The translations under genes and the position numbers were made by a program. The notes below the pieces were generated by a model. It did no database searches and was not told the origin of the DNA. It worked only from the letters and a program-made list of their open reading frames with translations. From Fonticula alba ATCC 38817 (taxonomy: Eukaryota; Protista; Nucleariida), in assembly GCA_000388065.2 (NCBI GenBank), contig KB932204.1: a stretch of 64,000 bases of DNA; one strand, written 5' to 3'. Of this stretch, positions 31,935 to 63,493 are shown piece after piece. Position 1 is the first letter of the stretch. Each line of letters begins with the position of its first letter.

Positions 31935-31949
31935 NNNNNNNNNNNNNNN
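31935..31949. other. Assembly gap (15 N)
   Basis: Run of N. Confidence 1.
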
Positions 31950-32013
31950 CCCCCCCCTCTCCCGACAGCCTCACATTCGGTTGACCACCTCTCGGCCTCC
32001 TCCAGCTGACATC

Positions 32014-33885
32014 ATGCTCAAGCTTTTCGGCATCGGGCTCTTGGAGTCCTCGGTCCAGTCGGCCATCCTACGTGCGGGGCTGCTCTTTGCCCTGCTGGCG
32101 GTGGCTGGCTTTGTGTGGGTGGTGGTCAACACCTGGCAGGTGTACATTTATCTGCGTCGGCATCGCGAGCGCGCGGCCGCCGTCAAGCGGGCCACCAAGA
32201 AGGAGCTGGTCAATGTTCGTCTCAGCCGCAAGCGCCTGGACCATGAGAAGGCCTATCTTCGCCAGCAGGCGCGCTTGGTGTTGAAGCCTCTCCGTCGGAC
32301 TGGAGCCACGGATGCCGCCGCCGGAGCCTCGCCCAGCTGCCAGCCGGCCCATTGTGCGGACGGCCCCCGTCCGGAGGCACGCCATCCCCTGGCGCCGGCG
32401 ATGACGGAGTCCGGCCAAGCCTCGGAGTCGATGGCGGCCGGGCAGCGCCGGGCATCGGACTCGGCGAAGAGCCTCTTTCGGCGCTTTTCCTTGCTGCACG
32501 ATCAAACCGGCGGCGTGCGGCCCCTGCACGAGTGGGCAGCCTCGCGGAATCAAGTCCGGGCCATTACTCGCCGTGCCAGCTCGGCCACAGGCCCCGCGAT
32601 TTCCGCCAGCCTGCTGGCCCGCCGGCGGGTCCTCTGCCGGACCAAGAGCGCCGGCGGCTTTGCCGAGGAGCCGATCGGCACCGGGTCCCCGGGCAATCTC
32701 GGCTCAGTCAGCTCCCTGGCCCGGGGTCCGGGGCCTCGGGCGACCGGGGGCAGCATGCTGCCGGGCCTTGCACGGTACACGGAGGCCCTGCGCCTGCAGC
32801 GGCCGCCGGTTGCCGGGCTGTCATCGGCCGCGGTCCCTGCGGCCCGACTGCCGCGTGTCAAGCGCACCCTCTCCTGTGACATCGTCATCCAGTCCAACTC
32901 CACGGAGGTGGTGCAGTTCCGGCACTTTGATCAGCGCTTTGTGGACGATCGGGTGTGGTCGCCGGAGCACGGGGCCAACCCGTTGCTGGCGGACCCCAGG
33001 TCCGGCGGGCTGGCCGGTGCCGGCTCGATCACGGTCCTGGATGACGACCATGAGTCCGACACCGACACCCATGGGGCCTCGGCGGCTGACGCCGCCGGAG
33101 CCGGCCCAGGCTGTGAGGGTGAAGGTCCGCTGGACATTTTCCGAGCCATTCGCCCGGCCACGTCCGGGCGTGGCTCGCGGCCGGGCAACCCCACTGGCGG
33201 CGGGGCCCCGGCGCGGACCTGCATCCCCCACATGGATCTCATCACCACCACGACCATGACCACCACGACCACCATGACCACCACGACCACCACGACCACC
33301 ACCCTGGCGGCGGCGGCGGCGGCGGTGGCCGGCGCCGGCGCCGGCGCCAGTCGCAAGGGGGCCCGGCCCATGCCGAGTTCCTGGTCGGCCCTGTCCGGGG
33401 GCCTGCTGTCGGTGGCGTCGCGGGCGCTCCTCCGCCGGCGGGCCTCCCTCGGCGGTGGCCCGTCCACCGGGGGGACCTTCTCCGAGCGTGGCATCAAGGT
33501 TTCGGCCGGTAGCATCAAGAAAACCGCCCACTGGATCATCAACCGCAAGCTCCCCTTCCAGGACGCGGTGGAGGACGACGAGTTCAGCCCCCACCGGACG
33601 GTGGACAACGAGACATACGATCGCATGGTGCTGAATGTGGCACACGATGCGCGGGAGCGCATCCTCGGCGCCTGTCAGGCCGGGGTCACCCCCGGGCCGG
33701 CCATCCGCACGGCCCCCCGCCTGAAGCTGCTGAGTGCCCGTCTGTCGTCACTGAATGAGGCCGGCGATTCGGCCGAGGCTCGGGCCACTCTCGCCGGCCA
33801 GACAGCCCCACTGCCGGCTCTCCCCCCGAAGCCCACCATGGGGTCGGTGATTGCCGGGCATGTGGCTGCCACGACGGCTGCGGCT

Positions 33886-33920
<35 letters not shown>

Positions 33921-35442
33921 GGGCGCCGGGCCCGGCTCGGTTAGCGCCCCTTCCGGAGCCCCGCCGGCCTCCTTGGCGATGCCCTCGATTCCCGAGGCTG
34001 GTGCCTCGCGCTCTTGCTCGCCCAGTCCCGCCGCCAACGGCGCTGGGGGCCCGACAGCAGCGGCCAGTGGCATGGGCGATGCCACGGGGCCAGCGACACG
34101 CACACGCATGCGTCGCGCCTCGCTCGGTCCCTTCCGCCTGACGTCGCAACAGTCTTCCCCCCTGCCGAGCGCCTATCCCGGGCCGACGCCCCACTCGGCC
34201 GGGCCCTGGTCTCATGGCTGCTCCTCGCCGTCGACTTCCTTCGATGCCCTTGCGGCGGCGGCGGCGGCGGCGGCGGCTGCTGCGGCGGCGGCAGCCGATG
34301 CCCCCGCCCCGATGACTGGCCCTCCTGCGGTCGCGTGTGTGCCCGCTGCTGGAGCGGCCAGCGTGGTGCCACCGGCTGGGCCTGCCTCGCATTCGGGCCT
34401 GACGCAGCCGATGGCGGAACTGCCACTGAAGCCGATCGAGCTGCCGCCCTGCCCGCGGCCGCGAGAGCAGCGGTCGCCCTCGCTGCCCGGGTCGCCGCCC
34501 ATGCGTGTGGCCGCCCTGCCGGAGCCCATTTCCGATCGCCTGGAAGCGCTGGCCAGTCCATCAATGTGTAATGGCAGCCCCTTTGTCAATAGCCCGCCCT
34601 TGACGCCGGCCTCGGTGACCCGGAGCTTTGCCGACGCCTCGATGCAGGCCGCCGGGCCGGCAAGTCCCACTTTCCAGCAGCCCCTGGCCCCCAAGCCCCT
34701 ACTGCCGGCGCGCCCAGTGGCCGAGCTACTGCTGGCCAATCATGCTCGTGGCTTCTCGGAGACCGGGACCCCGGAGCTGCCGCCGGCCCTGCCGCATGTG
34801 GCCTCGCAGTGCCCGGGCAATGTGGCCGGGCCGGCATCGGTGCTGGGCATGCCGGGCCCGAGGCCCTTGCCGCATGATGGGGCCCTTGCGGTGCCCGGCG
34901 GCCGGGCGGCTCAGGACCCGGCCCCGGCCCCGGCCCCGGGACCGATGCCGCCCCCGGGTCCAGCGCACCCGCTGGGCCTCCATCCGATGCAGCTTTACAC
35001 CCCGAACAGTCACCCCCCCGGGATGCCAAGCAACCCGGAGCACCGAGCCATGAGCTGGAAGCCGGCTGGCCTGAGTCCCATCCAGGAATCGGCCAGCCCC
35101 TATTCGGCATCGCCCAGCATCGGAGGCTGGGTCAGTCCCACGATGCAGGGCCTCGCCGGGCCTGCGGCCTCCGGCTCGCCAGCATGCGGGGTCCTTGCTG
35201 CTCGGCCGGGCCCCAGCCCGGGGGATAGCTTCTCCTGCCGGTCGGGACTGTCCATGGCCCTCGGAGGCCAGGTCCCCCTCGGCGTCATGGACGATGAGGA
35301 TGCCAGTGTCAGCATCATCAGCTCCCGTTGTCCGGCGGCCAGCGGCGGCGTTGTGTCTTTGATCTCCACCAGTCGCGTGGGGCCTGGCGTCCGGCCTCTG
35401 TCGCCCCCGCCCTCGCCTCCATCGCAAATGGCCGCAAATGGC

Positions 35443-35487
<45 letters not shown>

Positions 35488-38400
35488 GCCCCGACGACGA
35501 CGGCGGCTCCGACGCTGGCCGACCAGCCGGCCGTGGAGAGCCTGCCTGCCCGGATCGATGCCGACATGGTATTTTCGAGCCGCGGCAATCCGGCCACTTG
35601 GCGACCCCCTCGGGCCCGTGTCATTTCCGAGGTGCCCTTGCCTCCGGCTTTGTCCCGGCGCAATAGCCTGGCCAAGGGTGTGGCCAATGGCCGGCCGACC
35701 ATGCCGCAGGAACCGGAGGCCGGCAGCTGCCCCTTGCCGCCACGCATCCGGCCGGAGCCACGGCCGCCGGCCATCTCGCCGGATGGGCACATGGCGGGGC
35801 CGGCATCATCGCAACCCCTCTCGGCCTCCCTCCCGCTGGCTGGGCCGAATTTGGTGTCGCGGTTCACCGCGGCCACTCGTCGGGGGAGCTTCTCCGCCCG
35901 GCTGGAGATGCTTTCCACCTCGGAGGGGTTCACCCCGCTGGCCCTCGGGGCCCAGGGAGACGGCAGCAAGGCCGCCAGTCCGGAGAGGGGCCAGCTGCCG
36001 CCGCTGCCGCCGGCGTCCCTGCTTGCGGCCGGTCACCAGATCCTGGTTCAGCCCCCCTCGCCCCTCGTCCAGGTACCCCAGGCGGTGAGCCGGCCCCCAA
36101 CGGCCTCCCTGCCCCGGATCACCATCAACCCCAGCAACAGCCCGCCCCTGCCGCCGGCCCTGGTTCCGCCGCCGGCGGGCGTGGCCGACCCCGGTCGGAG
36201 TGGCGATTCGTCGGTGCTCAGCAGCCCGGCCGAAGCCAATAGCCTCCCCCGGCCGCGGCAGCGGCGGTCATACTCCATCTGCCACAGTTTGGACCCCTCG
36301 TCGCCGAATCGGCCCGCCGTCGACGAGAAGGGGCTCTGGTCGTTGGCGGCCGAGCGCCGCCGGCCGCTCACTTGGGACTGGTTCAAGTCCACCGAGGGGG
36401 AGATTTGGCGGGACATTCCCCTCTTTGCCCATGCTCCCAAGGGGTCGTACCTCATCTTGCCGGAGACGGCGGCCATCATGGCCGGCGGTGCGACCATCTT
36501 GCTGCAGTGCGCACATCCCTTTGTGGCCACTGCGGTGCGCAACCACTCGAAGATCGTCGACCGCCAGCCGGCGCCCGGGCCGCGCCATGGGAACTTGTCA
36601 TCCTCGGCGGCGGCCTTCGTCGCGGCCCCGGCCAGTGGCGGCATTACCAAGCGCTTTAATGGGACCCTGGCCATGATGTACCGGATCGGTGCGTGTGTGC
36701 AATGGGGCCTTGTCATTTTGGGGGGCCCTCCTTTTGTTCTTCTTCTTCTTTTTCCCCAACAAGCCCAAGGGGTCCTTCGCATTCCGGCCGGACCATTTCC
36801 CGCAACCTGTCGGGCGGCCGTCCTGCCGCTCTGAGTGGGGGGGGGGGCGCGCGGGGAATTGCCGCCACATTAAGACCTGCCCGCTTTTCGGGTGGCACTG
36901 TCCCTTGCTGACTATCGCCCTGGTCCCGGCTCTGGGGCACCCTCACCGCATCACAGCCTTCGGCACCTTTAATGAGGTTCTCTCGACCAGTCGCCGGGTT
37001 TATCGCATGCACGAGCGGGCGAAGGGCCTGATTCCGGAGCTGACGGTCGATGGGAAGCCGGCTCCGAATCTCGGGCCGCGGTACCCGCTCGGATCGACCT
37101 ACAGCGCCCGCGATCCGGGGGCCCTGCAGTGGATCGCGGCCACCGTCCAGTACATGCAGTTTATCGCCACCGAAATCGTGCGTCGAGAAGACCCGCCCGC
37201 CCGACCACACGGCCGCCAGAGTGCCCGAACACATGAGGGGACCAGGGGCCCGGGGGGGGGGGGGGGGGACACACCCGGCACGCCAGACCGAGGGATGAGC
37301 GCTTCTCCGCCGGGGCCAGATCATGACTTCGCAGGGAAGAGCCCCCGAGCCCGGTGTCCGCCCCCCCCCCCCCCCCCCCCCTTGGCTGTGTCTTATCATG
37401 CTGTGTGCTAACTTGCTTGTCGATTCCCCCCCGGAACAGATGCTCGGCCGGGAGTTCAGCGTCCACGAGAAGGACTCCGTCATCAAGCACAACCGGCAAT
37501 TCATCTATCCCTTCTTGGGCCTGGACCCGCGGAGTCCCGGGTCCACCAGCTGCTGGGAGGATCTGGAGGTGTATTTCCACTCGGTGTGTGATTCGATTTA
37601 CACCGAGATGACTACCAAGGAGGAGCCCCAGGTCGCGCGAGGCAGCCACAAAGGCAACCCCCTCCATAGGAAGGCCGCCCTGGCGGCCGGCACGGAGCCC
37701 GATGATGAGGAGTGGTTTGATGCTGTGCCTGCCATGCTGGCACCGCACTCGCTCGACGCCAAGTTCATTAGCGACATTGTGCTGGTGCCCTTCCTGCCGA
37801 TTGAGCGCTCGCTCGGTTTGAACAGCCTGGCCTCGATCACCGGTGCGTGTGATGCCCTCGGCGCCACTCTCGCGCTGCCCTCGATCCTCCATGTGGGTGG
37901 GCATATCTCATGAGCAGCACCGCCCCCTCGCCCCCTTTCCGACTCGCCCTTCCCTCCCTGGGAGCTTCTTGTGCTAACTGCCACGCTCCTTGCTTTGCCC
38001 TTCTGCGCGCCCTACATTTCGCTGCTTGGCTGCTGCTGCTGCCTGGGTTGCCCGGCATCGGTGGGGATTTTTTTCGCACCTGCTGCACGGGGAAACGGGT
38101 TCGACGCGTCGACTGATGTCTGCCGCCGGCGGGGGGGGTGGGGGAAGTACAGCCATCATGCTCCCGGACAAGATTGCCCATGCCTACAAGCTCCCGATGC
38201 GGCCGATCGACCGGCTGTATGGGCTGCTGATCTTGGGTGTCGCACGGTCCATGTATCGCCTTATGCCGGAACCCCTGCGCCAGTGCACCCCATACCGGGG
38301 GTTCCTGGCGCGGCTGCGTAGCTTGGCCGGGCGCTTCAATCGGACCTGGTCCACGCGTGCCCCGTCCAAGTACAAGTCCATGGGGCAAGGAATCAAGGTC

Positions 38401-50500: not shown

Positions 50501-52492
50501 ACCCACTTGGCCCGCATGGCCACAGTCGGGGCCACGACGTCCACGGTGGACGTGCCATTGAGAGTGGCATAGACAATGGAGAAGGCGCGTCCCTGGTAGG
50601 AGTCACGGCGCCACTTGGGGAAGCTGCAGTCCCGGGATGGCGGNNNNNNNNNNNNNNNNNNNNNNNNGGGGGGGGGGGGGGGGGCATGAGAGGGCGGGTG
50701 AGCTGGAATGCGCGGCCCCGGGGCGGTTAGCCGTTCAGCCGGAGGGCCAATATGGCCGAATTCCAGGCGGATTCCCCGGTGGCAGAATCCCAGAGAAATT
50801 CCACGCCGCGCCCCCCCCCCCCCCCTCCGGCCCGCGTCGCCCCGGCTACGCCGCATGTGGCGGACGAGGGCCGGGGGCCAGCCGGAGTCGCGCGCGCGCG
50901 CCCGGGCGGAGCCTTCCCGGCCGCGGCCGGCCCCGATGGGTGTGTATTCTCCACACGTCCGAAAGGCTGGCCTGCGCGGTCCCCCTTTCGAAGTCGGGGG
51001 GGGGGGGGGGGAAGCGGGGGCGGGGGTAACCCAGACATGGGTGAGCCAGTGGCCTCCGGTTGGACCAAAGAATGTGCCCTCCTCATTTCCAGCGCTCCGG
51101 TCCGCCGGGCGTGGGCCCGAGGCAGGAACATTGGCGCCCAAGGGGGCGACGCCGGCGCGGCGGACGCCGGGACCCGGCGCAGACAGGGCGGCAATATACA
51201 TGCGCCCGCCGTCGACGCCGGTGGCTCGTACATGGCCGCGCCCGGGGGCGACGGCGCCGGCGGGCACTGTGCGGGCCGCGAGCGCCCCGGCGGCCCCGGG
51301 TTGCCGTTTCGTCAATTGGGGAATGCTCTGCCGGGCCCTGCGCCGGGGGGGGGGTCCTCGCCCGGTGTGCCTGTGCCCAGGGCCGAAGACCTGACGGGAC
51401 ATGCGTCCTGTGGGGCGACCTGCCCTGTCTGTCCTCATTTGGCGGCCCCCCCCCCCCCCCCCCCAAGGGCCGCCCCGGCGCGTAGCCCTGGCCCTTGGGT
51501 GCGGTGCGTTCGTGCAGCTGCTCCAGGGCGCGGCTCTTTGGCGGGCGCGCTGTCCGGCGGTCGGGCCATCCTTTCCCCCGGGCCCGTTGCCCGGGGTGCC
51601 TTGTTTGACCTTTTGCCCTCTTTCTCTGGCGAGGGGGAGCTCGGGGGGGGGGGATGACCAGTGGCGGGCGGTGTCGCCCGGCAGGCCAAGACGCCCCGGA
51701 CGGCCCAGCCCCCACCTGGGCCCTGGGGCGGTCCTTTGCCGGCTGATGCTCCGGCGCTCATGCCGAGAGGCCTGCCGGGTGGGGTGAGCTGGAAGTCGCC
51801 GGGGAAGTCGCCGGCGACGTCCCCCCTGGAGGCCGGCTCCGGCGGATGCCCCGACCCCGGGCTTCGCGGTTTCGGTGGGCGCGCTCCTGCCAGGCAGGGG
51901 CAGGAGACGGACCCGGAGACAGGTCGGCCTGGCTGGGGGGGGGGGGGGGCGGAGATGGGGCCCGAATGACGAAGGGGGAGATATAGGAGCACGCACTGGC
52001 CCAGGTACTGGCCCTCGTGGACACCGATGATCATCGGGATCTCGATGAGAGTCTGATGTGAACGTTTGTTCGGTGACGACCAAGCCACCGCATAGCAGGG
52101 AACACCGGCGGCATGGAGCGAGTGCTCCTGGCGAACAACCGAGAAGCCGCGCTCGTGTGGCCGGGAGGATTGGCTCAGCTGTGTGTGTGGGGGGGGGGGG
52201 CGGGAAAATGAGCGGAGGCGAGGGTAAGAGGCAGATCGCGTCAACAAAGAGGAAACCCCCGCCACACAGAACACGGCACAGGCTCCGCCCCACGCAGACG
52301 CACCTTGATGAAGATGACGGTCTTTGACAGCTCGGACACCACGGCCTCCACCGGGGTCGAGGGGGGGAAGGCGTGCTCGGCACCGGAGGCCTCACTGCCG
52401 GCCAGGCCAGCATGGCCGTTGGACGCGGCCGAGGCAGAGGGCGACATGGCCAGGGAGGAGGCACTAGAGGAGGCAGACCGCAGGGAGGCCAT
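47583..52492 (-). CDS. PLC1: Phosphoinositide-specific phospholipase C, delta/Plc1-like (PH, EF-hands, X, Y, C2)
   Basis: Exons 52492-52304, 52178-51997, 50623-49966, 49859-49386, 49206-48771 and 48631-47583. PH (AFSIVY...WVSGLRRLV), EF-hand (DRDGDRGMTLEE), X-box (DMTRPLTDYWIAAAHN, GCRMLELDCHDG, VIHHG), Y-box (ELSSLVNY, RVYPLGVRFD, MVAMNYQ, NGRSGYLLKP) and C2 (DPYV, NGLTPVW, GYRNISL). Confidence 0.93.
50644..50667. other. Assembly gap (24 N) inside PLC intron 2
   Basis: Run of N next to poly-G. Confidence 1.
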
Positions 52493-52596
52493 CGTGATCG
52501 GGGACAGGCAGCTGGGTGTGCGTGCGGGTGTGGGTGTTCTTGCCGGGGAACTTTCTTATGTCTCTCTCTCTCTCTTTCTCTCTCTCGCACTCAAAT

Positions 52597-52815
52597 GGCA
52601 GGGGGCGACTGCGGGGCTCGGCTGGGCGCGGCTGCGGGGAGGGAAAAAGACGGGAGCGGGGCAGGAGCAAGGGGGAAGGAGTAGGGGGAAGGGGCGAGAT
52701 CGGAAGAGCACACGTGGCAGGGGGCGACTGCGGGGCTCGGCTGGGCGCGGCTGCGGGGAGGGAAAAAGACGGGAGCGGGGCAGGAGCAAGGGGGAAGGAG
52801 TAGGGGGAAGGGGCG
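52597..52815 (+). repeat. Two identical 100-bp direct repeats (52597-52696 and 52716-52815) separated by an Illumina adapter fragment; probable assembly artefact
   Basis: The copies are identical by eye. The spacer 52697-52715 is AGATCGGAAGAGCACACGT, and an N gap begins at 52820. Confidence 0.9.
52697..52715 (+). other. Illumina TruSeq adapter read-through sequence
   Basis: Exact 19-nt match to the adapter start AGATCGGAAGAGCACACGT(CTGAACTCC...). Confidence 0.92.
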
Positions 52816-52819
52816 GGAG

Positions 52820-52847
52820 NNNNNNNNNNNNNNNNNNNNNNNNNNNN
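52820..52847. other. Assembly gap (28 N)
   Basis: Run of N. Confidence 1.
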
Positions 52848-53230
52848 GGGGGAGGGCTGTGGTGGTGGACATGGACCCACCAGATGGCGAGCGATGGCTC
52901 CCGTTGAATTGTGTGCCCCAGGAGGAGTCGCATGCGAGACTGCCCCAGGTCCAGCGCCAGAGCCCGCTGGACAGGCCTCTATCGGGGGCAGGAGGGGGGT
53001 GATGGGACAAACCCACCTGCCAGAGGGAGGGGCGAGCCAGGGCGGCTCCTGGAGGGGCTCGTGGCGCCGCCCGGGAGGCGGGGGCTCGTCCACCGTGTCG
53101 CGGTCTTGATGAGGGTTGGCCGGCGTGCCGGCTTGGCGCGGCGCAAGCACACGCCGAAGCATCGTCGGGGCGACTGAACTGGGCGCCGGGCGCCGGAGAA
53201 AAATGTGTCACAGAGCACAGGTGCTCGGTC

Positions 53231-53254
53231 CGCGCGCGCGCGCGCGCGCGCGCG
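53231..53254. repeat. (CG)12 tract
   Basis: Seen directly. Confidence 0.95.
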
Positions 53255-56200
53255 AGCAAGCGCGCGAGCGATCGTGCAATATTGGCGCGCGGTCCCGGAC
53301 GCCGGGATGAACTACTGGGGGCCAAGCGCGGGGGTTTGAGGGACCGGAGAATGGTTGGGGCCCCAGCTGGGTGTGGGCTGGCGCTCAGCGCGGCGTCCCC
53401 GTCAAGCCAGCAATCGAGCGAGGCCAAGGGGGCCGGCACTTTCGCGCGCCGAGCCGAAGGGGAAGACATAGTGGTTGCAAAGGGCGCCGGCAGGGGCGCC
53501 CAACCCTTGCTGGGGCTGGTTGGCCCTGCGCGATCTACCGTCGGGCCGGGTGCCGAGCGGCGGGCCCCACCGCCGGCCGAGCCCATGTAGTGTCTGGCCG
53601 CCGTCTTCCCGAAAAAAGGAGGCAGACCCCCCTCTCCCCCAAGCACGTAGAGTTTAAGGGGGGGGGGGGAGAGAGAGAGAGAGAGAGAGGGAGAAAGCGA
53701 GGGAGGGAGACACCCACGTCCCCGGCCACCATCCAGTGAGGGGGGGGAGGGGCGGGCGGGGGAGACAGGCGTCGGCCGGGAATGCCTCGGACGGCCAGGG
53801 CGGGGGGGGGGGGGGGGGGGTGTTTCCTCGTGCGTGGATATCGGGGGAGTGTGTGCACGCGGGAGGACGACCCCTGAGAGGAATGAGCCTGACCGGCGGG
53901 GGGGGGGGCCGAGAAGAAATGCTTGGCAAGTTGGGGCCCGGCCGGTCCGAGTGCTTCGGGCTGCGCGGAAGGCTGTGTCAAGGCGCGGGATCATCGCCAC
54001 CACCGGCTCCACTGGCGCATCCATCCGGGGGACCATGTCCGCACATCGGCGAGGGGGTGCCTGTGTGTGTGTGTGTGTGTCTGCCCTCCTGACTCCGCCC
54101 CGGAAAGACCCCTCCCCGGGCCCTCGGGGGATTCTCGGGGGGGGGGGGGGGGGGCGCGGACGGGAACAGCCAGAGGAGTTACCCCGGCTGGCTGGCAACC
54201 AGCGGAATGACAGCTCAAACCGGGAGGGTGGGAAAAAGGGAATTGGCTCGGCCAGGGGGAGGGGCTCCGAGAGAGCCATGCGGTGAGGACACCCCGCCCC
54301 GGAGAGGCGGGCCTGCGGGGGGGGGGGGGGGGGGGCCCCGAGGGGGCGCCACAGCCCTACGGGCCGGGGGGAAAATGGCCCATGTCTGCCTCCTCTCCCG
54401 GCCGCCCCGCCTCTCCGGCCGACTCCTCCAAGGGGCGGGGGGTCTTTTCCCAGAGCGAGGCGGCCCGCCGCGGGGCATGGCTGGTGGCGAACAAGCCCTG
54501 TCCCTCGGTCCCCCCCTCGCCTGTTCCCGCCCTCGTCCGAGCGCGGAGCGGTGTTCGCCTGGGCCATATCTCGCACACCATGTCCGGCGGCGCGGGATCG
54601 CGTTGTCTGCGGGCTCCGGTCGGGCCTTTCATATTGGCCGAGATCCGGCGGGTCGGCCCCGGTGGCCGCCCAGGCGGTGGTCGCCGGTCCGGCAGTCGGT
54701 GGTTCTTGCCATCCCCCCTCATGCCCCCCCCCCCCCCGCTCCCTCTCCCCTCCCTGCGCCCCGTCCGGGGACCGGCAGGAAGGGAACAGGGGTGGCGATG
54801 GCCGGCTGTGGTGCCGGAGGTCCAGGTACGGAGGAGTCTCGACCTCACTGGCCGGGCGCCAGCCAAACATCCGAGCGGCCGGGGAGCGTCGGCCGACGTA
54901 CCTACCCCTGCAAAGGGGCGGGGCTGCCGCCAGCAGCAGGATGACCGTGCGTCGGTGGAATATCGAGCGTGCGCTCTGGAGTATGATGGCCGGTCGCCCG
55001 GCCGAGCCCCTGACCGGTGCCAGGCTGTCGACACCTCCCTCCATCGAGGGCGCGGGATCGGGGGGCGGGCTAGGGTTGCGGCCTATGCAGGGGGAGAGGG
55101 GGGGCGAGCGGCGCGGATGGGCCGGTGTGGGGTCTTCCACTCCGGATGGCGCTGGCCTGGGGGCGCGCTCGACCTTACAGGGAAAGGGGTCGGTCGCCGG
55201 GCACAGGGGCACCCCTCCCGAGGGCGGTCGGCCCGAATTTTGCGCCCTCGCCACGCGCATTCCAAGGCCGACGAGAGCCGCCCGGCCGGACGCGAAGGGC
55301 CAAGCGGCGGGGCAGCACACGATGCATGGTCGAGGCCGGCAGGGGGAAGTGCCCGGATCACGTATCGGCCGGCCGCTCGACGGATACACATGTCTGGCGC
55401 TCCTGCAGGCGCGCCAGGCCGGCTGACACCAAGCAAGCGGGAAATAATAATTCCCCCCCGCGGCAATGATGACGGGCCAATATCCGACTCCAACCTGGAG
55501 GCGAGGCCGCGTGTATGCATGTAGGCCCCCGCGGCTGTCGCTATGGTGCCCCCCCTTTTCCCCGCCGCCCGGTGCTCTCTCTCTCTCTCTCTCTCTCTCC
55601 CCCTCTCTCGGCTCGAGCATGCCCCGACCTGTGGCGGCTGCGTTCGGGATGGTGACGAGGAGGGGGCCCGGCAACAGGTAAATCTTGGTCGGTGGTCTAG
55701 CAATATCATAGTTTCCATTTAAATGCGGCTTTTTCGGGCCACAAACAGGGAGTGCCCGCCTCATTCCGTCCCCCTCCCGCCCCGGTGGCCGAGCGCCAGG
55801 GCGCGCGCAGGCGACATCATGCACACACGAGGACGCACATCACAGGCACCCGGGGCCGTGGGTGACGCGGAACACACCCTTTCCCGGGGCCCTGGCAGTC
55901 GTATGTCGTTCAATGGTTCCCCCCTGGCCAGCAGGGCCCGCGTGTGTGCGTTACCGCGTGGGTGCCCGCGTGCATGCGGCATGCGAGAGGGAGCGTGTGC
56001 GTGCGTGCGTGCGTGCGTGTGAGTATATTATGTCCGCGCTCATGATGTGCCGAGCTAACTGCCTGTTCCGCGCCCCTCGCCCGCCCCCCCCCCCCGGGGG
56101 GGGGGGTGGCAGCGATATACAGGTGGGCGCCGAAGGAGCGAGCCCAATGTGGCGGCGCCATTGACGAGGCGGCGACACGGGCTTGGCTCTTCTTGGGATC

Positions 56201-58187
56201 GGACGAGGGGTCACGCCGCAAGAAACGCGTCAGACTCTTCTCCCCCGCCAGGGATGTCCCCTGCTCTTGGCCCCCCCCCCCCCCCCCCCCCCGCGGCCAC
56301 CCCCACGCATCCGAACGTGCTGTCTCCCATGGCCCGGGGACAATGTGTCGTCCCCCTCGGAGGAAGCCCGACCGGGGGTGGCCAGAGGCCGGGGAGAAGA
56401 TACAGAGGCCCCCAAATTCGGCGGCGTGCCTGCCGGACTCACCCGGCGGGCGCCGGGGCTGCCTTTTGAGGGCGCCCAGCGGGGGCGCGCACGCCTCTGT
56501 TGCTTGGTGCCGGTGGTCCTCAGGGGACATTGCGCTTCCCTTGTGCCCGGAGAGGGAGACCCGGCCTTGGATCGGCACAGGGACTCGCGGGGCGGCCAGG
56601 CCCCGAGGGCTTGAAGGGCCCGCCTCCCGCCCCCAAGCATGGGATGTTGTGGAAGGGGCGGCGGATCCCCACCGGGCGGGAAGCGGCGCATGGCACTGGT
56701 GAGCCCGCGGGTGCGGCCAGTTCCTCGGGAGGAATTCACGGCCCCCGGGTGCAGTGCGCTTGACCCCCTTTCCCCGGCTGGGGCTGGGAGCACTCAGCCA
56801 CATCGCCGGCGCGCTTCGCCCACCGTGAAGGTCCATAATATTTGGACCCCTTAAATGATGGTTTTGACACCGAGGGGGCTGGCCCGCGGCGTGCTGGCCT
56901 GGGTCGGCTGATCCTCCGACATATCACACCGGCCGCCACGAATCAGGCGGTCACATCCAAGAGCCCGGATCACGGAACACCACATGTCCGAGATAGTGGA
57001 CCAATCTTGATGCCAAAGATCGGCCCTCCCGCCTGCGCCGCACACCGACGAGGATACGCGGGCTAATGGGGGGGCTATTGCGGCCGGGGGAACCCTGCTT
57101 CTGTGCCCTGATCTTGAGGGGAGTCCTGCTTTTTCAGCTGTTTGTGCCTCCCTGTGTTCGCTCCTCCAGTGCGGGGGGGGGGCGAGACTGACGCCCGCCT
57201 ATCGGGCGTTGGTTGGCCGCTAGCGACCCCACGGCCGCCGGCTTCGGCGTGCCCTCTTTGTCCGATCCCCCGCTGAGGGGCGGGGGCGGGGGCAGGGTGG
57301 CGGGAGTGAGGGAGGCCCCTCATGCCCGGCAATGTCGGGGTTTCACCAGTATAATCATCGAGATACTCATTGGAACGCGCCGATGAGGGCACTTTTGAGA
57401 AGGGCCTGTGTGTGGGCGTGGTTCGGCCACCCGACCAGGGGTCGAGGTCTCTCCGGGCTTCCTCCGGCATCTTCTCCCCTTCCCCTCTGGGCGGTTTGCT
57501 GGATGTGTGTGGATGTATGTGGTCCGGCCTTCCGGCTTCTCAGACATGGAGCCCCGGGGCTTGAAGACACACCGTCCGACGAGGGGCAGTCGCGGCGGCG
57601 GAGGGGTGCACGTCGATCTCCTCGAGACAAGATCTCCTCCGCTTCGCAGCATCGTCAGAGCCGCCCCCCCGGGGGGTGGCCCCCCCCCCCCCCCCCCCCC
57701 CACCCAGGCCGGGACCCGGGCAGGGACAGTGCAAGCGAGCAGCCGCAGATGCCCGCGTGCCGCGACGTACGCGCCCCTGGCGCTAATTCGTCGGTTGCCG
57801 GGCGCGTGAATGTCGACTGGCATCATCCACACATGCCTTTTCTCGCTTTCCCGCTCCCGGCATTTGCTCGCCCTCGCTTCGGCCCCCTCCTACAACAACA
57901 CCCCCCCCCCACACCCCCACGCACACAGAAGACCCGGCCCCATCCCCCCTCGACGCGCAGCCTCCTGACAACCGAAGCCACCTTGGCGACTCCCCCCCCC
58001 CTCCCTTCTGTCCCCCTCTCCTTTTGCCCCTCGCTCGCCTCCTCCGCCCAATCATAGCTCGCTCCTTCTCCCTCGGCCCGCCCCCGCCCCCCTCCCCTCC
58101 CCCCCTTCGGTTGCCGGGTCTGTCGCCTGAGGAGGAATATCCCACTCCTCGCCTCTCTCTCTCTCCCCCCCCCTCCCAGACTGCACC

Positions 58188-58981
58188 ATGTCCCTCTCCG
58201 ACACCGGCATTGAGCTGAGCAACTTCAGCAGCCCCTCAGTGCAGTCGGACATCCCCTCCTCAATGGCCTCCTCGGTGGAGGCCTTCTCAACGGTCCCCAG
58301 CGAACCGGGGCTCAGCATGCCAAAGAAGTACGGCTCGCCCCTATCCGGCCACATGAGCAAGGCATCCCTCGGAGCCGACCTGGAGCCCGACCTGGATCCC
58401 ACCACGGACCCGGCCGATGATGCACGCCTCGCGGCGCAGGATTACCAGCAGCAGCATGCGACCGCCGGGTCCGGTAGCCGGGGTCGCACCCTCTTGCACC
58501 AAAGCGTGGCCACCATCCGGTTCTACTTCACCCAGACCGCTCGTCATGTTACGCGCAATCCCGGATCCGCTTTCCTGGCTTTGCTGGCCGTGACCATCGC
58601 CGTGCTGGCGGTGGGTGTGGCCCTGACCGCGCTCGAGGTGGCCCCAGTCCTGTTCCTGGGCATGGCCGAGTCCAAGGCCGCCGAGATTGACCTGCTCTTG
58701 ACCCCGGCCCAGCTGGGCGGTGACATCGACTTCCTGGCCTTGAACTTCACTCTCCTGGACCAGGAGCTGGCACGGGACAACTTGGCCGACGCACCGGCCC
58801 ACGGTGCCGAGGCCGCGGTGTCCGTCTCGCCCGATGGCCTGGAGCAACTGGCCTCCGGGCAATTCTCCGGCGCCTGGCAATGGCGTGCGCGCACCGGGCG
58901 CAAGAACATCCGCGTCAATATCAACTCCCTGGGCACTTGCCTTGTGCAGTCAGATGTCAGCGCCATCGGTGGTGCTGGTGG

Positions 58982-59013
<32 letters not shown>

Positions 59014-62000
59014 GCAACAGCAACAGCAACAGCGGTGGGGCCGGGGCGCGCATGCTGGCCGACCCGGGCCCCGCATCGGACTTCGAATCTCCCATTCCCG
59101 ATGGCGAGGCCCCTCCGGCCGTGGAATCCTTTGTCGATGGCCAGGCCGGCTGGGCGCCGCCCTTGACCCCGATCGACCGGCATTCACGGATGAATTTCAG
59201 CACCTGGACGCGCGCGCTCGGCCGCTGGACCGGCATCACCCCGGCCCCGGCATCCCCTCGTCGGATGGAGCCCTTCCGCATCGCGGAGTACATTCCGCCC
59301 GACTCGCAGCAGCAGCAGAACCTCTGCATCGAGGACGCCCGCCAGTGCCGGGAGCTCCTCTGTCCCCCGTCCATGACCGGCAGCATCCTGCTGGTGGATG
59401 CCAAGCGCGAACGGGCCATGGGCCTCGGCCGTGGCTGGACCAACACCCTGGAGCGCGGCACGTGTGTCATCCACCGTGAGGTGGCTCGAACGGTCGGCCT
59501 GCAAGCCGGCGACCATCTGCTGGTCACTTTCCATGTGGACTCCAAGGCTACCCTCCTGCCCTACTTCCATGCCATTGGCCTGAACATCACCGAAACCGAT
59601 GAGGAATCTGGCAGCCTGGCCATGCCGTTGAACACCGTGACCGTGTCCCTGCCTTTGCGCGTGTCCGAGGTGGTTTCCTCATCGAAGGGCAAGTGGCCTT
59701 CCCGCAATCGAGACGGTGCGTGGCGCCCATCTTCCGGTCCCCTGCTGCCTACTCTGCTTTCCTCCGGGCCCCCTCCCCCCCCCCCCCCGGGAATCTGCCC
59801 TCGGTCTTTCACTGGCTGTCTAATCCTCCCCCCTCCCCCGTCCTCTTGGCCCCCATCCTGTCCATCTGTTCCCTCCCCCCCCCTCCCTCCTCCCCCCTCC
59901 TCGCCTCCCCCTCGACCGACCCTCCACGCCTGTCCCCCCTTGCGGACCACCTCGCTTCAGTCATCATCATGGACATCCACAACTTCCTGCCACTGGCCAG
60001 CAGCGGCATTGAGCCGGATGCCAAGTTCACCGAGCAAGTCCTGGCGGACCTGGCCGCGTTGGACCCACTGGTCGCCGTGGACAGCGTTCTCTTTGCCATT
60101 CCCCCGGTTGGGGAGGAGTCGCTGCGACTGAGCCAGCTCGAGGGGTACTACGATCCGGCTTTGGGGCAAACGTCGCCGGCGCTGCTCGACCGGCCCGGGC
60201 TCCAACGGCACGAGGCCTACATTCGGTCGAACTTCGACACCTCGGCGCGCGAAGTGACGCGCTGGGCCTCGCGCATTGCCACGCGCTTGGGTCTGACGCA
60301 ATTTGAAAACCAATTGCCGGTGCTCGTGGAGTACGAGGAGACGGCCTACGCCACGGCCTTCCTGAGTCTGGCCCTGAACATCATCATCATCCTCCTGGCG
60401 GCCGTGAGCGCGCTGCTGGTGGATGCGTTGTTGATTGCCGCGGCCGAGGCGCGGGCCTCCGACTGGGCCAAACTCCGGGTGTTGGGGTTGCGGCGGACGC
60501 CGCATGTGGCGGCCCTGGTGCTGATCCACGCCCTCGGGGCGGTGGGCATCCCGGCCACCGTGATCGGTCTCTGCCTGGCGCAGGCTCTCCATTCGGGGGT
60601 TGTGCGCTCGGTGCTCGGGTCCTTCGTGCCCGGGGTGACCATTGTCCGGGGGCTGACCCCGGTGGCGGTGGGAGTGGGCCTCGGGGTGGGCCTCGGGGTG
60701 CCGCTCATTGTGGCCATTCTCCCCGGCGGCCCGGTAGCCACGGCGAATGCTCCACGCCTGCACGACGCGCTGTATGCCTCCAGCCGGCCTCAAACCCAGG
60801 CCGTGGAGATCACCGTGTCCCGGTCCAACCCGGATCGCGCGCGCTCGGCACTCCTGATCACCGGCGCCCTTTTGGGCGGCTTCGGCGCCCTGGTGTACTA
60901 TGCCCTGCCGTTGGCACTGATCTCGGGCAACTTGGGCCTTCTGTTTGACATTTTCTTCATCATCCTAGCCGGCCTGATCCTCGGGTGTGTGCTTATTGCC
61001 CTGAATGCCCAGCCGCTCGTCGAGCGGGGCCTGGTCTCGGCCATGCTCTTTGTGGCCCGGTTCATCGGCGAGTCGGCGGCCACGGCGGGGCTGGTCCGGT
61101 CAAACTTGATTTCCCACCGCAAGCGGTATGCCCCCTCTTCCCTCCCTCCCTCCCCTTCCCAGCAACTGGCCGCCCCGCTTCGGGGCTGTCTCATTTTGGC
61201 CCTCTGTTCCCCTCCCCCCCCCCTCCCCCCGCCTCGGTTGCGGCCGCTCGCCCGTCACACCTTCACTGACCCTCGGCCCTCCGTCTGGCCTTTCAGCAAT
61301 CGCAAGTCCGCGTTGATCTACGCCACGTCGCTGTCGTTCGTGGTCTTCCTGGCGGTCGCCGCCGACATCGAGCTCCGGTCCATGGAGTATGAGACCATTC
61401 GTTGGTTTGGTTCGGATATTCGAATTGACTCGCGCAACATCGATCGCGGTGGCCCGACTTCCGGGATCCGCGAAGTGGAGTACGTGGCCTGCCTCCCGGC
61501 CACCATGTCTCCGGCCTTCTCGTCTGTGCCCTTTTCGATGTCTTCCTCCGGGCAATCCCACTGACAGACCCCGCGACCATGGTGCATGTACCTGCACAGG
61601 AAAATTGAGGCCTGGTGCCATGACAACCGGGATCTGATCGCCGGATGCGGGTGGATCAGCACCAGCACCTCGAATGCCCTGGTGGATAGCAGCTGGGAGT
61701 CCAACCGGCCGACGCGGCTGCAGACCGTCGGTCGGGCCATTCGCGAGGATCACTACGTGTATGGCGTCACCCCGGACCTGTTCAGTGCCTTCCCCGGGAA
61801 CATGTATGTCGAATCGCCCACCACATTGAACATGCGGCGGTCGATGCGCATGGCGACGACGGCTGAGATGGCCGCCGCGGCCGCCCAATGGGGCGCCGTC
61901 AGCTCGACGGCCGAGCAGCAGCGCGCCCTCTCCCAGGCAAAGATGGCCCACACGCCGGAGCTCCTGCTCTCCGGGGCCGGTCGAGGGCGCCTGGTCATGG

Positions 62001-63493
62001 GGTCCTACGCCCGGCAGGCTTATGGCCTGGAGCCGACGGCCATCCGAGCGGTCGAGCATGTGGCCCGCATCTGGGACACGATCCCGATCTCGCGGAACTC
62101 CTCGGCCATTCTGGTGGACGAGACCGACGGCCCGTATAAGCCGGCTCGGCGCCAGCTGTCCATCTTCCATCGTGTGCGCCCGATGGTGGGCGTCTTGACC
62201 AGGTGCGCGGTTTCATCATCCTCATTTCGGTGTATCTGGTCTTTCCAACGTTGTCCCTCTGCTGGCTCTTCCGCCACCTTCCCGGCCAATCGATCTCCTC
62301 CTGACACCCGGTCCCCTGGCCCGGCCCCCTCCAAAAGCCCCATGTTCACGGGGATGTCCAGCTCGACCGATGGGTATCGGCATTCGGTGACCTCGCTGCC
62401 GAACCAGCTGCGTTTGCTTTCCGGCTCCATCCGATCGGTATCACAGACGTGGGGCGAGTGGGATGAGGCTTTCGTCCAAGGCCCCTCGGCCTTCGGCCTG
62501 CCGCATCGGCTAGACTGGAGCGAGCGCGTTTACGAAACGGTGTCCGACTTGCCTCTGCGTACTTTCCTGGCGAAACTCCGGCCCAGTATGTGTCCCCGTT
62601 TGATGCATTTCCCCCCTGTCTCCAAGCATCGCCCCCCCCCCCCGGTTCCTGACCGACCATGCCATTGCTTTCCCCCCTCGCCGGCCGCCTTCCGCCGGGA
62701 ATGTGCCTCGGTGCTCAGACGTCACGGAGGCCCAGCTGGAGTACCTGATTGCCGCGGCTCCGACGGACTCGCAGCATGTCGTGCGCGATGTGCGCGATGA
62801 GATCCCGAGCCTGGCTGGGAATGCCCCGCTCTTGACGTTCCTCTTCCAAGGTGTTACCATCATCGTGCTGGTGGTGGCCTTCTTTGCCCTGTACACGGCC
62901 ATGGCGGCCAATGTGGCCACCCAGCGGTCGTTCCTCTTCCAAGGTGTTACCATCATCGTGCTGGTGGTGGCCTTCTTTGCCCTGTACACGGCCATGGCGG
63001 CCAATGTGGCCACCCAGCGGTCGGAGATCGGTGCCATGCGGGCCATCGGCGCCGGGCGGTGGTTTGTCTGGCGCGTGTATGCCTATGAGGCCTTTGTGCT
63101 GGTGGTGGCGTCGGCCATCCTCGGCTCGATCGTCGGGCTGCTGATCGGCTGGTCGATCAGCGCCCAGCGGGCTCTCCTGACAGGCATCCCGCTGGCTTTC
63201 CTCTTCCCCTGGTTGTCTGGCGCGTGTATGCCTATGAGGCCTTTGTGCTGGTGGTGGCGTCGGCCATCCTCGGCTCGATCGTCGGGCTGCTGATCGGCTG
63301 GTCGATCAGCGCCCAGCGGGCTCTCCTGACAGGCATCCCGCTGGCTTTCCTCTTCCCCTGGACGCTGGTCCTGACCGTGGGAGCGGGGGCGGCCCTGTCG
63401 GCCCTGCTGGCCACCGCGGTTCCGGTGGCGCATCTGGTTGCTGGTGGCAATGGCACCGTCGTGCGCATCATGCGTGGCGGAACGTCCGACTGA
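58188..63493 (+). CDS. Double-FtsX-domain (MacB/FtsX, ABC type VII) membrane permease, ~1,419 aa once the two duplications are removed; frameshifted as assembled
   Basis: Exons 58188-59715, 59961-61125, 61297-61479, 61600-62202, 62338-62585 and 62719-63493. Layout: TM (FLALLAVTIAVLAVGVAL), large extracytoplasmic domain, FtsX module 1 (LLVDALLIAAAEARASDWAKLRVLG), linker TMs, RSNLISHRKRNRKSALIY plus TM, second extracytoplasmic domain, FtsX module 2 (FALYTAMAANVATQRSEIGAMRAIG...VYAYEAFVLV...GSIVG). Confidence 0.8.
62838..63023 (+). repeat. Exact tandem duplication, 2 x 93 bp, in frame
   Basis: 62838-62930 equals 62931-63023; FLFQGVTIIVLVVAFFALYTAMAANVATQRS is encoded twice. Confidence 0.95.
63064..63361 (+). 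repeat. Exact tandem duplication, 2 x 149 bp, frameshifting
   Basis: 63064-63212 equals 63213-63361, and 149 is not a multiple of 3. Confidence 0.95.

What the first reader, a model, noticed from the sequence alone, without database searches (positions are those of the whole stretch)
58188..63493. Intron-containing eukaryotic MacB/FtsX-type (ABC type VII) double permease with no ATPase in the window
FtsX/MacB/LolCE permeases are bacterial envelope mechanotransducers that work with a cytoplasmic ATPase. This gene has five spliceosomal introns and the full tandem layout, but no Walker A/B or ABC signature, and no ATPase gene is adjacent. The first extracytoplasmic domain is Cys-containing (CLVQSD, CIEDARQCRELLC, CVIH) with an Asn/Ser insert. 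Similar proteins are, to my knowledge, annotated in some protists but uncharacterised. This may be an undescribed eukaryotic lipid/lipoprotein-extraction or signalling system that is ATPase-independent or uses a trans-encoded partner.
Basis: partly seen in the sequence, partly recalled or inferred. Interest (0 to 1): 0.7.

Follow-up and report, generated by a model that had tools for sequence, protein, structure and literature searches.

The report
Fonticula YbbP-like double FtsX permease
This is the Fonticula alba copy of a catalogued but unstudied eukaryotic family of fused "type VII" ABC-transporter membrane subunits; the gene is real and has five introns, its ATPase partner is simply not next door, and the public sequence carries two suspicious perfect duplications at its 3' end.

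Summary
Window 58188-63493 (+) is Fonticula alba gene H696_03056, in KB932204.1. It has five GT-AG introns with consistent phases. It encodes a roughly 1420-1490 aa, 10-TM protein made of two MacB/FtsX-type units joined by two linker helices.

- **Second FtsX domain:** passes Pfam (E 8e-16).
- **First FtsX domain:** degenerate in Fonticula (14.6 bits, below cut-off), but clear in orthologues and in the fold.
- **Fold:** an AlphaFold model of the closest named full-length orthologue matches E. coli YbbP (YbbAP, 9ge7) over its whole length.
- **ATPase:** no ABC ATPase lies in the window, in the flanks of four orthologues, or fused to any of 155 homologues.

The family is not undescribed: UniProt labels this protein by its ABC3/FtsX domain, and TCDB lists a "Eukaryotic ABC3" family (3.A.1.207). 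Missing adjacency means little in a eukaryote. The prokaryotic relatives checked have a roughly 240-aa ABC_tran gene directly upstream, and both coupling helices are conserved here. A trans-encoded ATPase is therefore the likelier reading, but it is untested.

New here:
- the family is spread across eukaryotes and looks vertically inherited;
- ectodomain 1 has four conserved Cys and a conserved N-glycosylation sequon;
- the last exon has perfect 93-nt and 149-nt tandem duplications, the second frameshifting, which are probably assembly artefacts.

The parts
58188..59715 (+). Exon 1. Encodes the cytosolic N-terminus (aa 1-95), an elbow helix, TM1 (about 58560-58679) and most of ectodomain 1.
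   Evidence: ORF and junction read from the sequence. The junction peptide matches P0001. Helices come from the AF2 model of P0001:95-935.
59716..59960 (+). Intron 1 (245 nt, GT..AG, phase 1, CT-rich).
59961..61125 (+). Exon 2. Encodes the end of ectodomain 1, the first FtsX unit (TM2-TM4), linker helices TM5-TM6 and the second elbow helix.
   Evidence: The HMMER search with this exon found 745 homologues.
58743..58751 (+). N-F-T sequon (N186) in ectodomain 1. N-x-S/T is present at this column in 35 of 42 family members.
58938..59363 (+). Span holding the four conserved ectodomain-1 cysteine codons: C251 at 58938-40, C380 at 59325-27, C387 at 59346-48 and C392 at 59361-63.
   Evidence: Conserved in 38-40 of 42 members. 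The codon position was checked.
58998..59189 (+). Fonticula-specific insert beginning with a low-complexity Asn/Ser run (aa 271-334). The model has low confidence here.
   Evidence: Listed as a P0001-specific insert against 41 homologues. pLDDT is below 50.
60377..60733 (+). First FtsX domain (aa 649-767), divergent. Coupling helix 1 lies at about 60455-60481.
   Evidence: PF02687 E 0.035, 14.6 bits, model positions 1-114 of 120; orthologous segments score E about 1e-15. The alignment keeps the conserved E, R, R, G and R.
60845..61063 (+). Two linker transmembrane helices (TM5-TM6, aa 805-877) joining the two units, as in YbbP.
   Evidence: AF2 helices H711-737 and H740-783 of P0001:95-935. 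YbbP topology is from PMC12646458.
61126..61296 (+). Intron 2 (171 nt, phase 2). Splicing recreates the invariant H-R-x-R-N-R-K motif before TM7.
   Evidence: The orthologue tblastn breaks exactly at 61126/61298.
61297..61479 (+). Exon 3. Encodes TM7 and the start of ectodomain 2.
61480..61599 (+). Intron 3 (120 nt, GTACGT..CAG, phase 2).
61600..62202 (+). Exon 4. Encodes ectodomain 2.
62203..62337 (+). Intron 4 (135 nt, phase 2).
62338..62585 (+). Exon 5. Encodes ectodomain 2.
62586..62718 (+). Intron 5 (133 nt, GTATGT..CAG, phase 1).
62719..63493 (+). Exon 6. Encodes the end of ectodomain 2 and the second FtsX domain (TM8-TM10, coupling helix 2), then the stop. As assembled it is interrupted by two tandem duplications.
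   Evidence: PF02687 E 8e-16 (62949-63221) and E 1e-5 (63224-63436). PDB sequence hits to YtrF, LolF, FtsX, MacB and LolE.
62836..63021 (+). Perfect 93-nt tandem duplication (2 copies, in frame). It duplicates TM8 (31 aa) and is absent from all 41 orthologues compared.
63064..63361 (+). Perfect 149-nt tandem duplication (2 copies, not a multiple of 3, so it shifts the frame). The same 49 orthologue residues align twice, in frame 3 and then in frame 2.
63152..63183 (+). A 32-nt 'intron' in the public gene model, inside conserved FtsX coding sequence. It is most likely an annotation device to restore the frame.
   Evidence: Derived from the P0001 sequence against the DNA. The five real introns are 120-245 nt.

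Best explanation
The gene is the Fonticula alba member (H696_03056) of an old, widely but patchily distributed eukaryotic family of fused type VII (MacB/FtsX-fold) ABC permeases. The family most probably corresponds to TCDB's 'Eukaryotic ABC3' family. The protein has 10 TM helices: TM1, ectodomain 1, TM2-4, two linker helices, TM7, ectodomain 2, TM8-10. This is the pseudo-dimeric architecture of E. coli YbbP. The N-terminus and both coupling helices face the cytosol. The two ectodomains face the cell exterior or the lumen of a secretory or endocytic compartment, as the conserved disulfide-type cysteines and the N-glycosylation sequon suggest. Inferred mechanism: two copies of a separately encoded cytosolic ABC ATPase dock on the two coupling helices. 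ATP binding and hydrolysis is passed through the stalk helices to the ectodomains (mechanotransmission). The ectodomains then either extract a hydrophobic or lipid-like substrate from the outer leaflet or drive an extracytoplasmic partner protein. Shown: gene structure, domain and fold identity, family distribution, and absence of a local ATPase. Inferred: topology, the trans ATPase, and the substrate class. The two perfect duplications in the last exon are most likely assembly artefacts, in which case the real protein is about 1419 aa.
For: - **Identity.** The window piece is 100% identical to XP_009495219.1 / A0A058Z9U2 of Fonticula alba, and the locus is KB932204.1.
- **Domains.** PF02687 hits. 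All 42 aligned family members carry FtsX, and P0003 carries two copies. The family profile hits MacB, YtrF, LolE, LolC and LolF in the PDB at 1e-8 to 1e-12.
- **Fold.** The AF2 model of orthologue P0003 (pLDDT 83, pTM 0.76) matches E. coli YbbP (9ge7_A, 9ge6_A) over about 1070 columns at E 1e-19. BceB, LolE/C, MacB and HrtB follow. Fonticula's own N-terminal half (pLDDT 74) matches LolC/E, MacB and HrtB at E down to 7e-7.
- **Eukaryotic and vertical.** There are five introns. Neighbours are PI-PLC and DAO genes in Fonticula, and ribosomal S28e, Nup84, VPS13 and XK-related genes at orthologous loci. In the tree, eukaryotes separate from sampled prokaryotes (SH-aLRT 100), and Amoebozoa, Preaxostyla, Discoba, aphelids, Blastocladiomycota and chytrids each cluster together. 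The profile score falls from at least 663 bits for eukaryotes to at most 89 bits for prokaryotes.
- **Exposed ectodomain.** Four Cys are conserved in 38-40 of 42 members, and the N-x-S/T sequon in 35 of 42.
- **ATPase in trans.** The coupling-helix motifs are among the best conserved columns. The prokaryotic double-FtsX relatives checked have a 239-250 aa ABC_tran gene immediately upstream. Fused permeases always use a separate NBD (PMC5985334). YbbAP has a 2 YbbA: 1 YbbP stoichiometry with two coupling helices (PMC12646458). NBD-only 'ABCH' proteins exist in Dictyostelium and Tetrahymena (PMC3743828 and PMC2984421).
- **Artefact reading of the duplications.** Both are 100% identical and absent from 41 orthologues. 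A third perfect tandem duplication in the same window carries an Illumina adapter at its junction, next to an N-gap.
Against: - No partner ATPase has been identified in Fonticula or in any eukaryote that carries the family. I could not search eukaryotic proteomes for one.
- None of 155 homologues is fused to an NBD.
- The Fonticula copy sits on a long branch (1.52 against a median of 0.83), and its first FtsX domain falls below Pfam's threshold. One half may therefore be losing function.
- The ectodomains do not hit PF12704 by sequence; only 1 of 42 members does.
- Membership of TCDB 3.A.1.207 was not tested directly.
- As assembled the reading frame is broken, and I have no reads to prove this is an artefact.
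Confidence: 0.62

Rival explanations
1. The family is ATPase-independent. It has lost its NBD partner and now acts as a passive receptor, scaffold or lipid-handling membrane protein.
For: No NBD is fused in 155 homologues. None lies in the window or near four orthologues. The first FtsX domain is degenerate in Fonticula.
Against: Both coupling helices keep their conserved charged and Gly positions across deeply divergent eukaryotic lineages, Fonticula included. Adjacency is not expected in eukaryotes. Every structurally characterised relative needs an NBD dimer. NBD-only ABC proteins without a known membrane partner exist in amoebae and ciliates.
Confidence: 0.15
2. The Fonticula gene is a recently inactivated pseudogene. 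The 93-nt and 149-nt duplications are real. They duplicate TM8 and part of TM9, shift the frame, and destroy the second FtsX unit.
For: As assembled, the frame breaks at 63213 and a stop follows at 63291-63293. The public model needs an implausible 32-nt intron. A duplicated TM8 would put coupling helix 2 on the wrong side of the membrane.
Against: The rest of the gene is intact, with all family-invariant residues and correct splice phases. The copies are 100% identical. The same scaffold contains a perfect duplication with an embedded Illumina adapter beside a gap, so the assembly makes this kind of error.
Confidence: 0.2
3. The gene is bacterial contamination, or a recent horizontal transfer of a bacterial YbbP/MacB-type permease.
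For: FtsX-domain permeases are overwhelmingly prokaryotic. The window is GC-rich at about 65%.
Against: The gene has five spliceosomal-type introns and eukaryotic neighbours on a 3.07-Mb scaffold. The nearest relatives are all eukaryotic, and the tree is largely congruent with eukaryote taxonomy. E. coli YbbP shares only generic FtsX-level sequence similarity.
Confidence: 0.02

Closest known systems
E. coli YbbP of the YbbAP-TesA complex (PDB 9ge6, 9ge7; PMC12646458)
   Same: Both are single-chain, pseudo-symmetric type VII permeases: TM1, periplasmic-type domain, TM2-4, two linker helices, then a second copy. Both have two coupling helices and no fused NBD. YbbP is the best full-length structural match of the family model (E 1e-19).
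   Different: Sequence similarity is only at the generic FtsX level (hhalign E 0.011; NF041854 scores 14 bits against a cut-off of 999). The eukaryotic proteins are 200-650 aa longer. Their ectodomain 1 is larger, with conserved Cys and a glycosylation sequon. No adjacent ybbA or tesA equivalents are present, and the genes contain introns.
TCDB family 3.A.1.207, 'Eukaryotic ABC3 (E-ABC3)'
   Same: It is a catalogued family of eukaryotic ABC3 (MacB/FtsX-type) membrane porters with no characterised function (PMC7997004). That description fits this protein.
   Different: I could not compare the protein with the TCDB entries, so membership is inferred. The paper reports homologues in Heimdall and MK-D1 archaea, which I did not recover.
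MacB, LolC/LolE, FtsX, HrtB, YtrF and BceB (bacterial type VII ABC systems)
   Same: They share the FtsX domain, the 4-TM unit with an extracytoplasmic domain between TM1 and TM2, and the stalk and coupling-helix arrangement.
   Different: Those are single units that dimerise (BceB has one ectodomain), and they work in the bacterial envelope with partners that eukaryotes lack, such as MacA/TolC, LolA and EnvC. None of the NCBIfam equivalog cut-offs is approached.
NBD-only 'ABCH' proteins of Dictyostelium and Tetrahymena
   Same: They are orphan soluble ABC ATPases in lineages related to carriers of this family. [quoted passage not shown] They are candidate trans partners.
   Different: No evidence links them to this family. 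I did not have their sequences and did not test whether they are MacB/LolD-like. The family's presence in D. discoideum itself was not checked; I found only Polysphondylium.

Membership tests
Type VII ABC (MacB/FtsX-fold) permease | FtsX domain (PF02687) formed by the last three TM helices of a unit | tested here: met
   The C-terminal unit scores E 8e-16, 58.6 bits against a cut-off of 25.5.
Type VII ABC (MacB/FtsX-fold) permease | A second FtsX domain in the N-terminal unit (the tandem layout) | tested here: inconclusive
   In Fonticula it scores only 14.6 bits (E 0.035), below the 25.5 cut-off, although it spans model positions 1-114 of 120. The aligned segments of three orthologues score E 4e-14 to 2e-15. 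The fold of the Fonticula N-half matches LolC/E and MacB. It is homologous but degenerate.
Type VII ABC (MacB/FtsX-fold) permease | A large extracytoplasmic domain of the MacB/LolCE periplasmic-domain type (Porter plus Sabre in PMC12646458) between TM1 and TM2 | tested here: inconclusive
   PF12704 does not hit the Fonticula ectodomains, and it hits only 1 of 42 members. The orthologue model matches the isolated LolE and MacB periplasmic domains (5udf, 3ftj) at E 6e-6 to 1e-4.
Type VII ABC (MacB/FtsX-fold) permease | Works with a cytoplasmic ABC ATPase dimer | not testable with these tools
   No NBD lies in the window, at four orthologous loci, or fused in 155 homologues. A search of the whole Fonticula genome was not possible. 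The coupling helices are conserved.
YbbP-type fused 10-TM permease | Two 4-TM units joined by two linker TM helices in one chain | tested here: met
   AF2 helix maps of P0003 and of P0001:95-935. Full-length Foldseek match to 9ge7_A.
YbbP-type fused 10-TM permease | Sequence equivalog of YbbP (NCBIfam NF041854) | tested here: not met
   14.2 bits against a cut-off of 999. hhalign of the family against E. coli YbbP gives probability 3.8%. The architecture is the same, but this is not an orthologue.
TCDB 3.A.1.207 Eukaryotic ABC3 | Significant similarity to the TCDB reference members | not testable with these tools
   The family's existence is known only from PMC7997004. No TCDB sequences were available.
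LolCE / FtsX / MacB equivalogs | NCBIfam trusted cut-offs (TIGR02212, TIGR00439, NF007826) | tested here: not met
   Scores of 13-25 bits against cut-offs of 255-966.

The most novel reading that the evidence does not exclude
Eukaryotes inherited a type VII ABC mechanotransducer from very early in their history. It carries glycosylated, disulfide-bonded ectodomains. It either runs without any ATPase or is powered by the so-far orphan NBD-only 'ABCH'-type proteins. It performs an unrecognised extraction or remodelling step at the outer or lumenal leaflet in amoeboid and zoosporic lineages, and was lost in animals, Dikarya and plants.
Probability: 0.15. Interest if true: 0.75.

Novelty: new member of a known kind. 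Interest (0 to 1): 0.42.

Why it matters
The type VII ABC papers I read treat these systems as bacterial envelope machines; the 2025 YbbAP paper contains no occurrence of "eukaryot". This gene belongs to a conserved, apparently vertically inherited eukaryotic family with the YbbP architecture and secretory-pathway hallmarks. No experimental data and no known energising subunit came up in my full-text searches. Identifying the partner ATPase and the substrate would define a new eukaryotic membrane process, and could give a function to orphan NBD-only ABC proteins.

Practically, the public protein model XP_009495219.1 probably contains about 70 residues of artefactual sequence. The scaffold also carries adapter contamination.

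Tried and rejected
**Searches that led nowhere**
- Word-indexed protein searches with the exon-2 ORF and with P0001 residues 590-1000 found nothing but the protein itself. This is a method limit caused by hydrophobic words and length windows, not absence of relatives: the exhaustive HMMER search found 745.
- Pfam and NCBIfam on whole exon ORFs missed the first FtsX unit. It appeared, sub-threshold, only when cut out.
- A phmmer search of exon 2 against PDB sequences found nothing.
I did not pursue the closest prokaryotic source or the reported Asgard homologues.
- hhalign of the N-half against the C-half (A2 against A3) returned only the stretch that I had left overlapping between them, so it says nothing about the internal duplication.
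- tRNA and Rfam scans of the window found nothing.
- Pfam on ten long ORFs elsewhere in the window gave no usable hits.
- Anjard & Loomis 2002, on Dictyostelium ABCH, is not held. One literature query was too broad to help.

**Explanations rejected**
- Bacterial contamination or recent HGT.
- LolCE, FtsX or MacB orthology.
- YbbP orthology.

Full report
**What is there**

The window is about 65% GC. On the + strand, 58188-63493 holds a run of long ORF pieces in changing frames. Reading the DNA gives six exons:
- 58188-59715
- 59961-61125
- 61297-61479
- 61600-62202
- 62338-62585
- 62719-63493

They are separated by five GT..AG, CT-rich introns of 245, 171, 120, 135 and 133 nt, with consistent phases. 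An exhaustive HMMER search used a referenced piece, window:59963-61477, which is exon 2, the in-frame intron 2 and exon 3. It returned a 100%-identical public protein, P0001. P0001 is XP_009495219.1 / KCV70703.1 / UniProt A0A058Z9U2, 'hypothetical protein H696_03056' of Fonticula alba, on the 3.07-Mb scaffold KB932204.1.

All five of my junction peptides match that protein. tblastn of four orthologues against the window breaks at 61126 and resumes at 61298 on consecutive residues. The splice there recreates the family-invariant H-R-x-R-N-R-K motif. The organism is a holomycotan amoeba, not human. The gene is a normal nuclear gene, with a PI-PLC gene upstream and other eukaryotic genes downstream.

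**Domains and fold**

- **Second FtsX domain.** PF02687 (FtsX) hits the last exon at E 8e-16. The same piece hits YtrF, LolF, FtsX, MacB and LolE chains in the PDB.
- **First FtsX domain.** No whole-exon scan detects it. Cut out as P0001:620-800, it gives a sub-threshold but end-to-end FtsX match (E 0.035, 14.6 bits against a cut-off of 25.5, model positions 1-114 of 120). The aligned segments of three orthologues score E 4e-14 to 2e-15.
- **Family.** All 42 aligned family members carry FtsX, and the closest named full-length orthologue, P0003, carries it twice. The family profile hits MacB, YtrF, LolE, LolC and LolF in the PDB.
- **Orthologue model.** An AlphaFold model of P0003 (Paraphysoderma, about 28-35% identical, depending on the region compared) built with the family alignment is confident (pLDDT 83, pTM 0.76). 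Its best Foldseek match is E. coli YbbP in the YbbAP complex (9ge7_A, 9ge6_A) over about 1070 columns, at E 1e-19. BceB, LolE/LolC, MacB and HrtB follow, as do the isolated periplasmic domains of LolE and MacB.
- **Fonticula model.** The model of Fonticula's own N-terminal half, P0001:95-935, has pLDDT 74 and is poor only in species-specific inserts. It matches LolC/E, MacB, HrtB and YtrF.

The helix maps give this layout: elbow helix, TM1, ectodomain 1, TM2, coupling helix, TM3, TM4, two linker helices, a second elbow helix, TM7, ectodomain 2, TM8, coupling helix, TM9, TM10. This is the 10-TM pseudo-dimer described for YbbP (PMC12646458; PMC5985334). At sequence level it is not a YbbP orthologue: NF041854 scores 14 bits against a cut-off of 999, and hhalign gives probability 3.8%.

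**No ATPase nearby, and what that means**

I found no ABC ATPase by any of these checks:
- No Walker A, signature and Walker B set occurs in any frame of the 64-kb window.
- tblastn with E. coli YbbA finds only noise in the window and in the flanks of four orthologous loci.
- The called neighbours at those loci carry no ABC_tran domain.
- None of 155 homologues has a Walker A or LSGGQ motif.

It is weak evidence for ATPase independence, for four reasons:
- Eukaryotic genes are not organised in operons.
- In bacteria the NBD of fused double permeases is always a separate polypeptide.
- The archaeal (Methanomassiliicoccus) and Chloroflexota double-FtsX relatives I examined have a 239-250 aa ABC_tran gene directly upstream.
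- The two coupling-helix motifs are among the most conserved columns of the eukaryotic family, and Fonticula keeps the key E, R, R, G and R positions even in its degenerate first unit.

NBD-only 'ABCH' proteins without a known membrane partner are reported in Dictyostelium and Tetrahymena. That is a lead, not a result. I could not search the Fonticula proteome for a stand-alone NBD.

**The family**

The HMMER search found 745 homologues at E<=1e-3 and 84 at E<=1e-30, mostly 1000-1200 aa. Named members come from these groups:
- **Holomycota:** Fonticula; the aphelids Paraphelidium and Amoeboaphelidium; Paraphysoderma, Blastocladiella and Sorochytrium; the chytrids Borealophlyctis, Fimicolochytrium and Rhizophlyctis.
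- **Amoebozoa:** Polysphondylium, Mayorella, Rhizamoeba, Dracoamoeba and Planoprotostelium.
- **Preaxostyla:** Paratrimastix and Trimastix.
- **Discoba:** Naegleria and Ploeotia.
- **Glaucophytes:** Cyanophora.

Several of these are transcriptome-derived, so family members are expressed in other species. Transcription in Fonticula itself was not testable.

In a profile search, eukaryotic members score at least 663 bits and the best prokaryotic double permeases at most 89 bits. A quick maximum-likelihood tree separates eukaryotes from the sampled prokaryotes (SH-aLRT 100). It also recovers Amoebozoa, Preaxostyla, Discoba, aphelids, Blastocladiomycota and chytrids as clusters. This pattern fits old vertical inheritance with losses better than recent transfer. 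Two cautions apply: the search was short, the prokaryote sampling was thin, and Fonticula sits on a long branch (1.52 against a median of 0.83).

**Ectodomain features**

C251, C380, C387 and C392 are conserved in 38-40 of 42 members. C426 ('CVIH') is conserved in only 7 of 42. An N-x-S/T sequon at N186 is conserved in 35 of 42. Together with the predicted N-in topology, this argues that ectodomain 1 is exposed to the secretory-pathway lumen or the cell exterior. The Asn/Ser stretch lies within a Fonticula-specific insert, aa 271-334.

**Prior knowledge**

The family is catalogued. UniProt names this very protein by its ABC3/FtsX domain. TCDB lists a 'Eukaryotic ABC3 (E-ABC3)' family, 3.A.1.207, and reports homologues in Heimdall and MK-D1 archaea (PMC7997004). 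Full-text searches found no functional study. The 2025 YbbAP-TesA paper does not mention eukaryotes. I therefore rate it a new member of a known but uncharacterised kind.

**Sequence problem in the last exon**

Two 100%-identical tandem duplications lie in exon 6: 93 nt (62836-62928 / 62929-63021) and 149 nt (63064-63212 / 63213-63361).
- Both appear as Fonticula-only inserts against 41 orthologues.
- The same 49 orthologue residues align twice, first in frame 3 and then in frame 2.
- The 149-nt copy shifts the frame, so the continuous ORF ends at 63293.
- The public model restores the frame with a 32-nt 'intron' at 63152-63183 inside conserved coding sequence.
- A duplicated TM8 would also put coupling helix 2 on the wrong side of the membrane.

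A third perfect tandem duplication in the same window (52596-52815) has the Illumina adapter AGATCGGAAGAGCACACG at its junction and abuts an N-gap. This assembly therefore produces such artefacts. I judge an artefact more likely than a real, very recent inactivation, at about 75:25. Reads are needed to decide.

**Verdict**

- The most likely function is the membrane subunit of a YbbAP-like type VII ABC machine with a trans-encoded ATPase. The identity is near certain; the mechanism is inferred at about 0.6.

Noticed in passing
window 52596-52847: A perfect 119-nt tandem duplication whose junction carries the Illumina adapter start AGATCGGAAGAGCACACG (52697-52714). An N-run gap (52821-52847) follows directly. 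This is adapter contamination and an assembly artefact in scaffold KB932204.1.
   Followed up: yes
window 63152-63183: The public gene model for H696_03056 contains a sixth 'intron' of 32 nt inside the conserved FtsX-2 coding sequence. It apparently serves only to bridge the frameshift made by the 149-nt duplication. As a result XP_009495219.1 carries about 70 aa of duplicated or out-of-frame sequence.
   Followed up: yes
window 52492-58188: A stretch of about 5.7 kb with no called gene lies between the PI-PLC gene and this gene. It is 68-71% GC with strong positive GC skew. It contains long minus-strand ORFs (52591-55824, 1077 aa; 55910-56836, 308 aa) with no Pfam hit. These may be chance ORFs in GC-rich DNA or an unannotated gene.
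   Followed up: partly
window 31765-36834 (+) and 9383-12427 (+): Very long ORFs (1689 aa and 1014 aa) have no Pfam family at E<=0.01. The first lies in the most GC-rich part of the window (71-73%). A degenerate tandem array of 21/42/63-nt periods at 10071-10222, and a separate 24-nt array at 10320-10401, lie inside the second.
   Followed up: no
L003 and P0012 (Paraphysoderma sedebokerense): Paraphysoderma has at least two paralogues of the family (P0003, 1096 aa; P0012, 1344 aa), and they do not group together in the tree. Gene duplication within Holomycota may be old.
   Followed up: no
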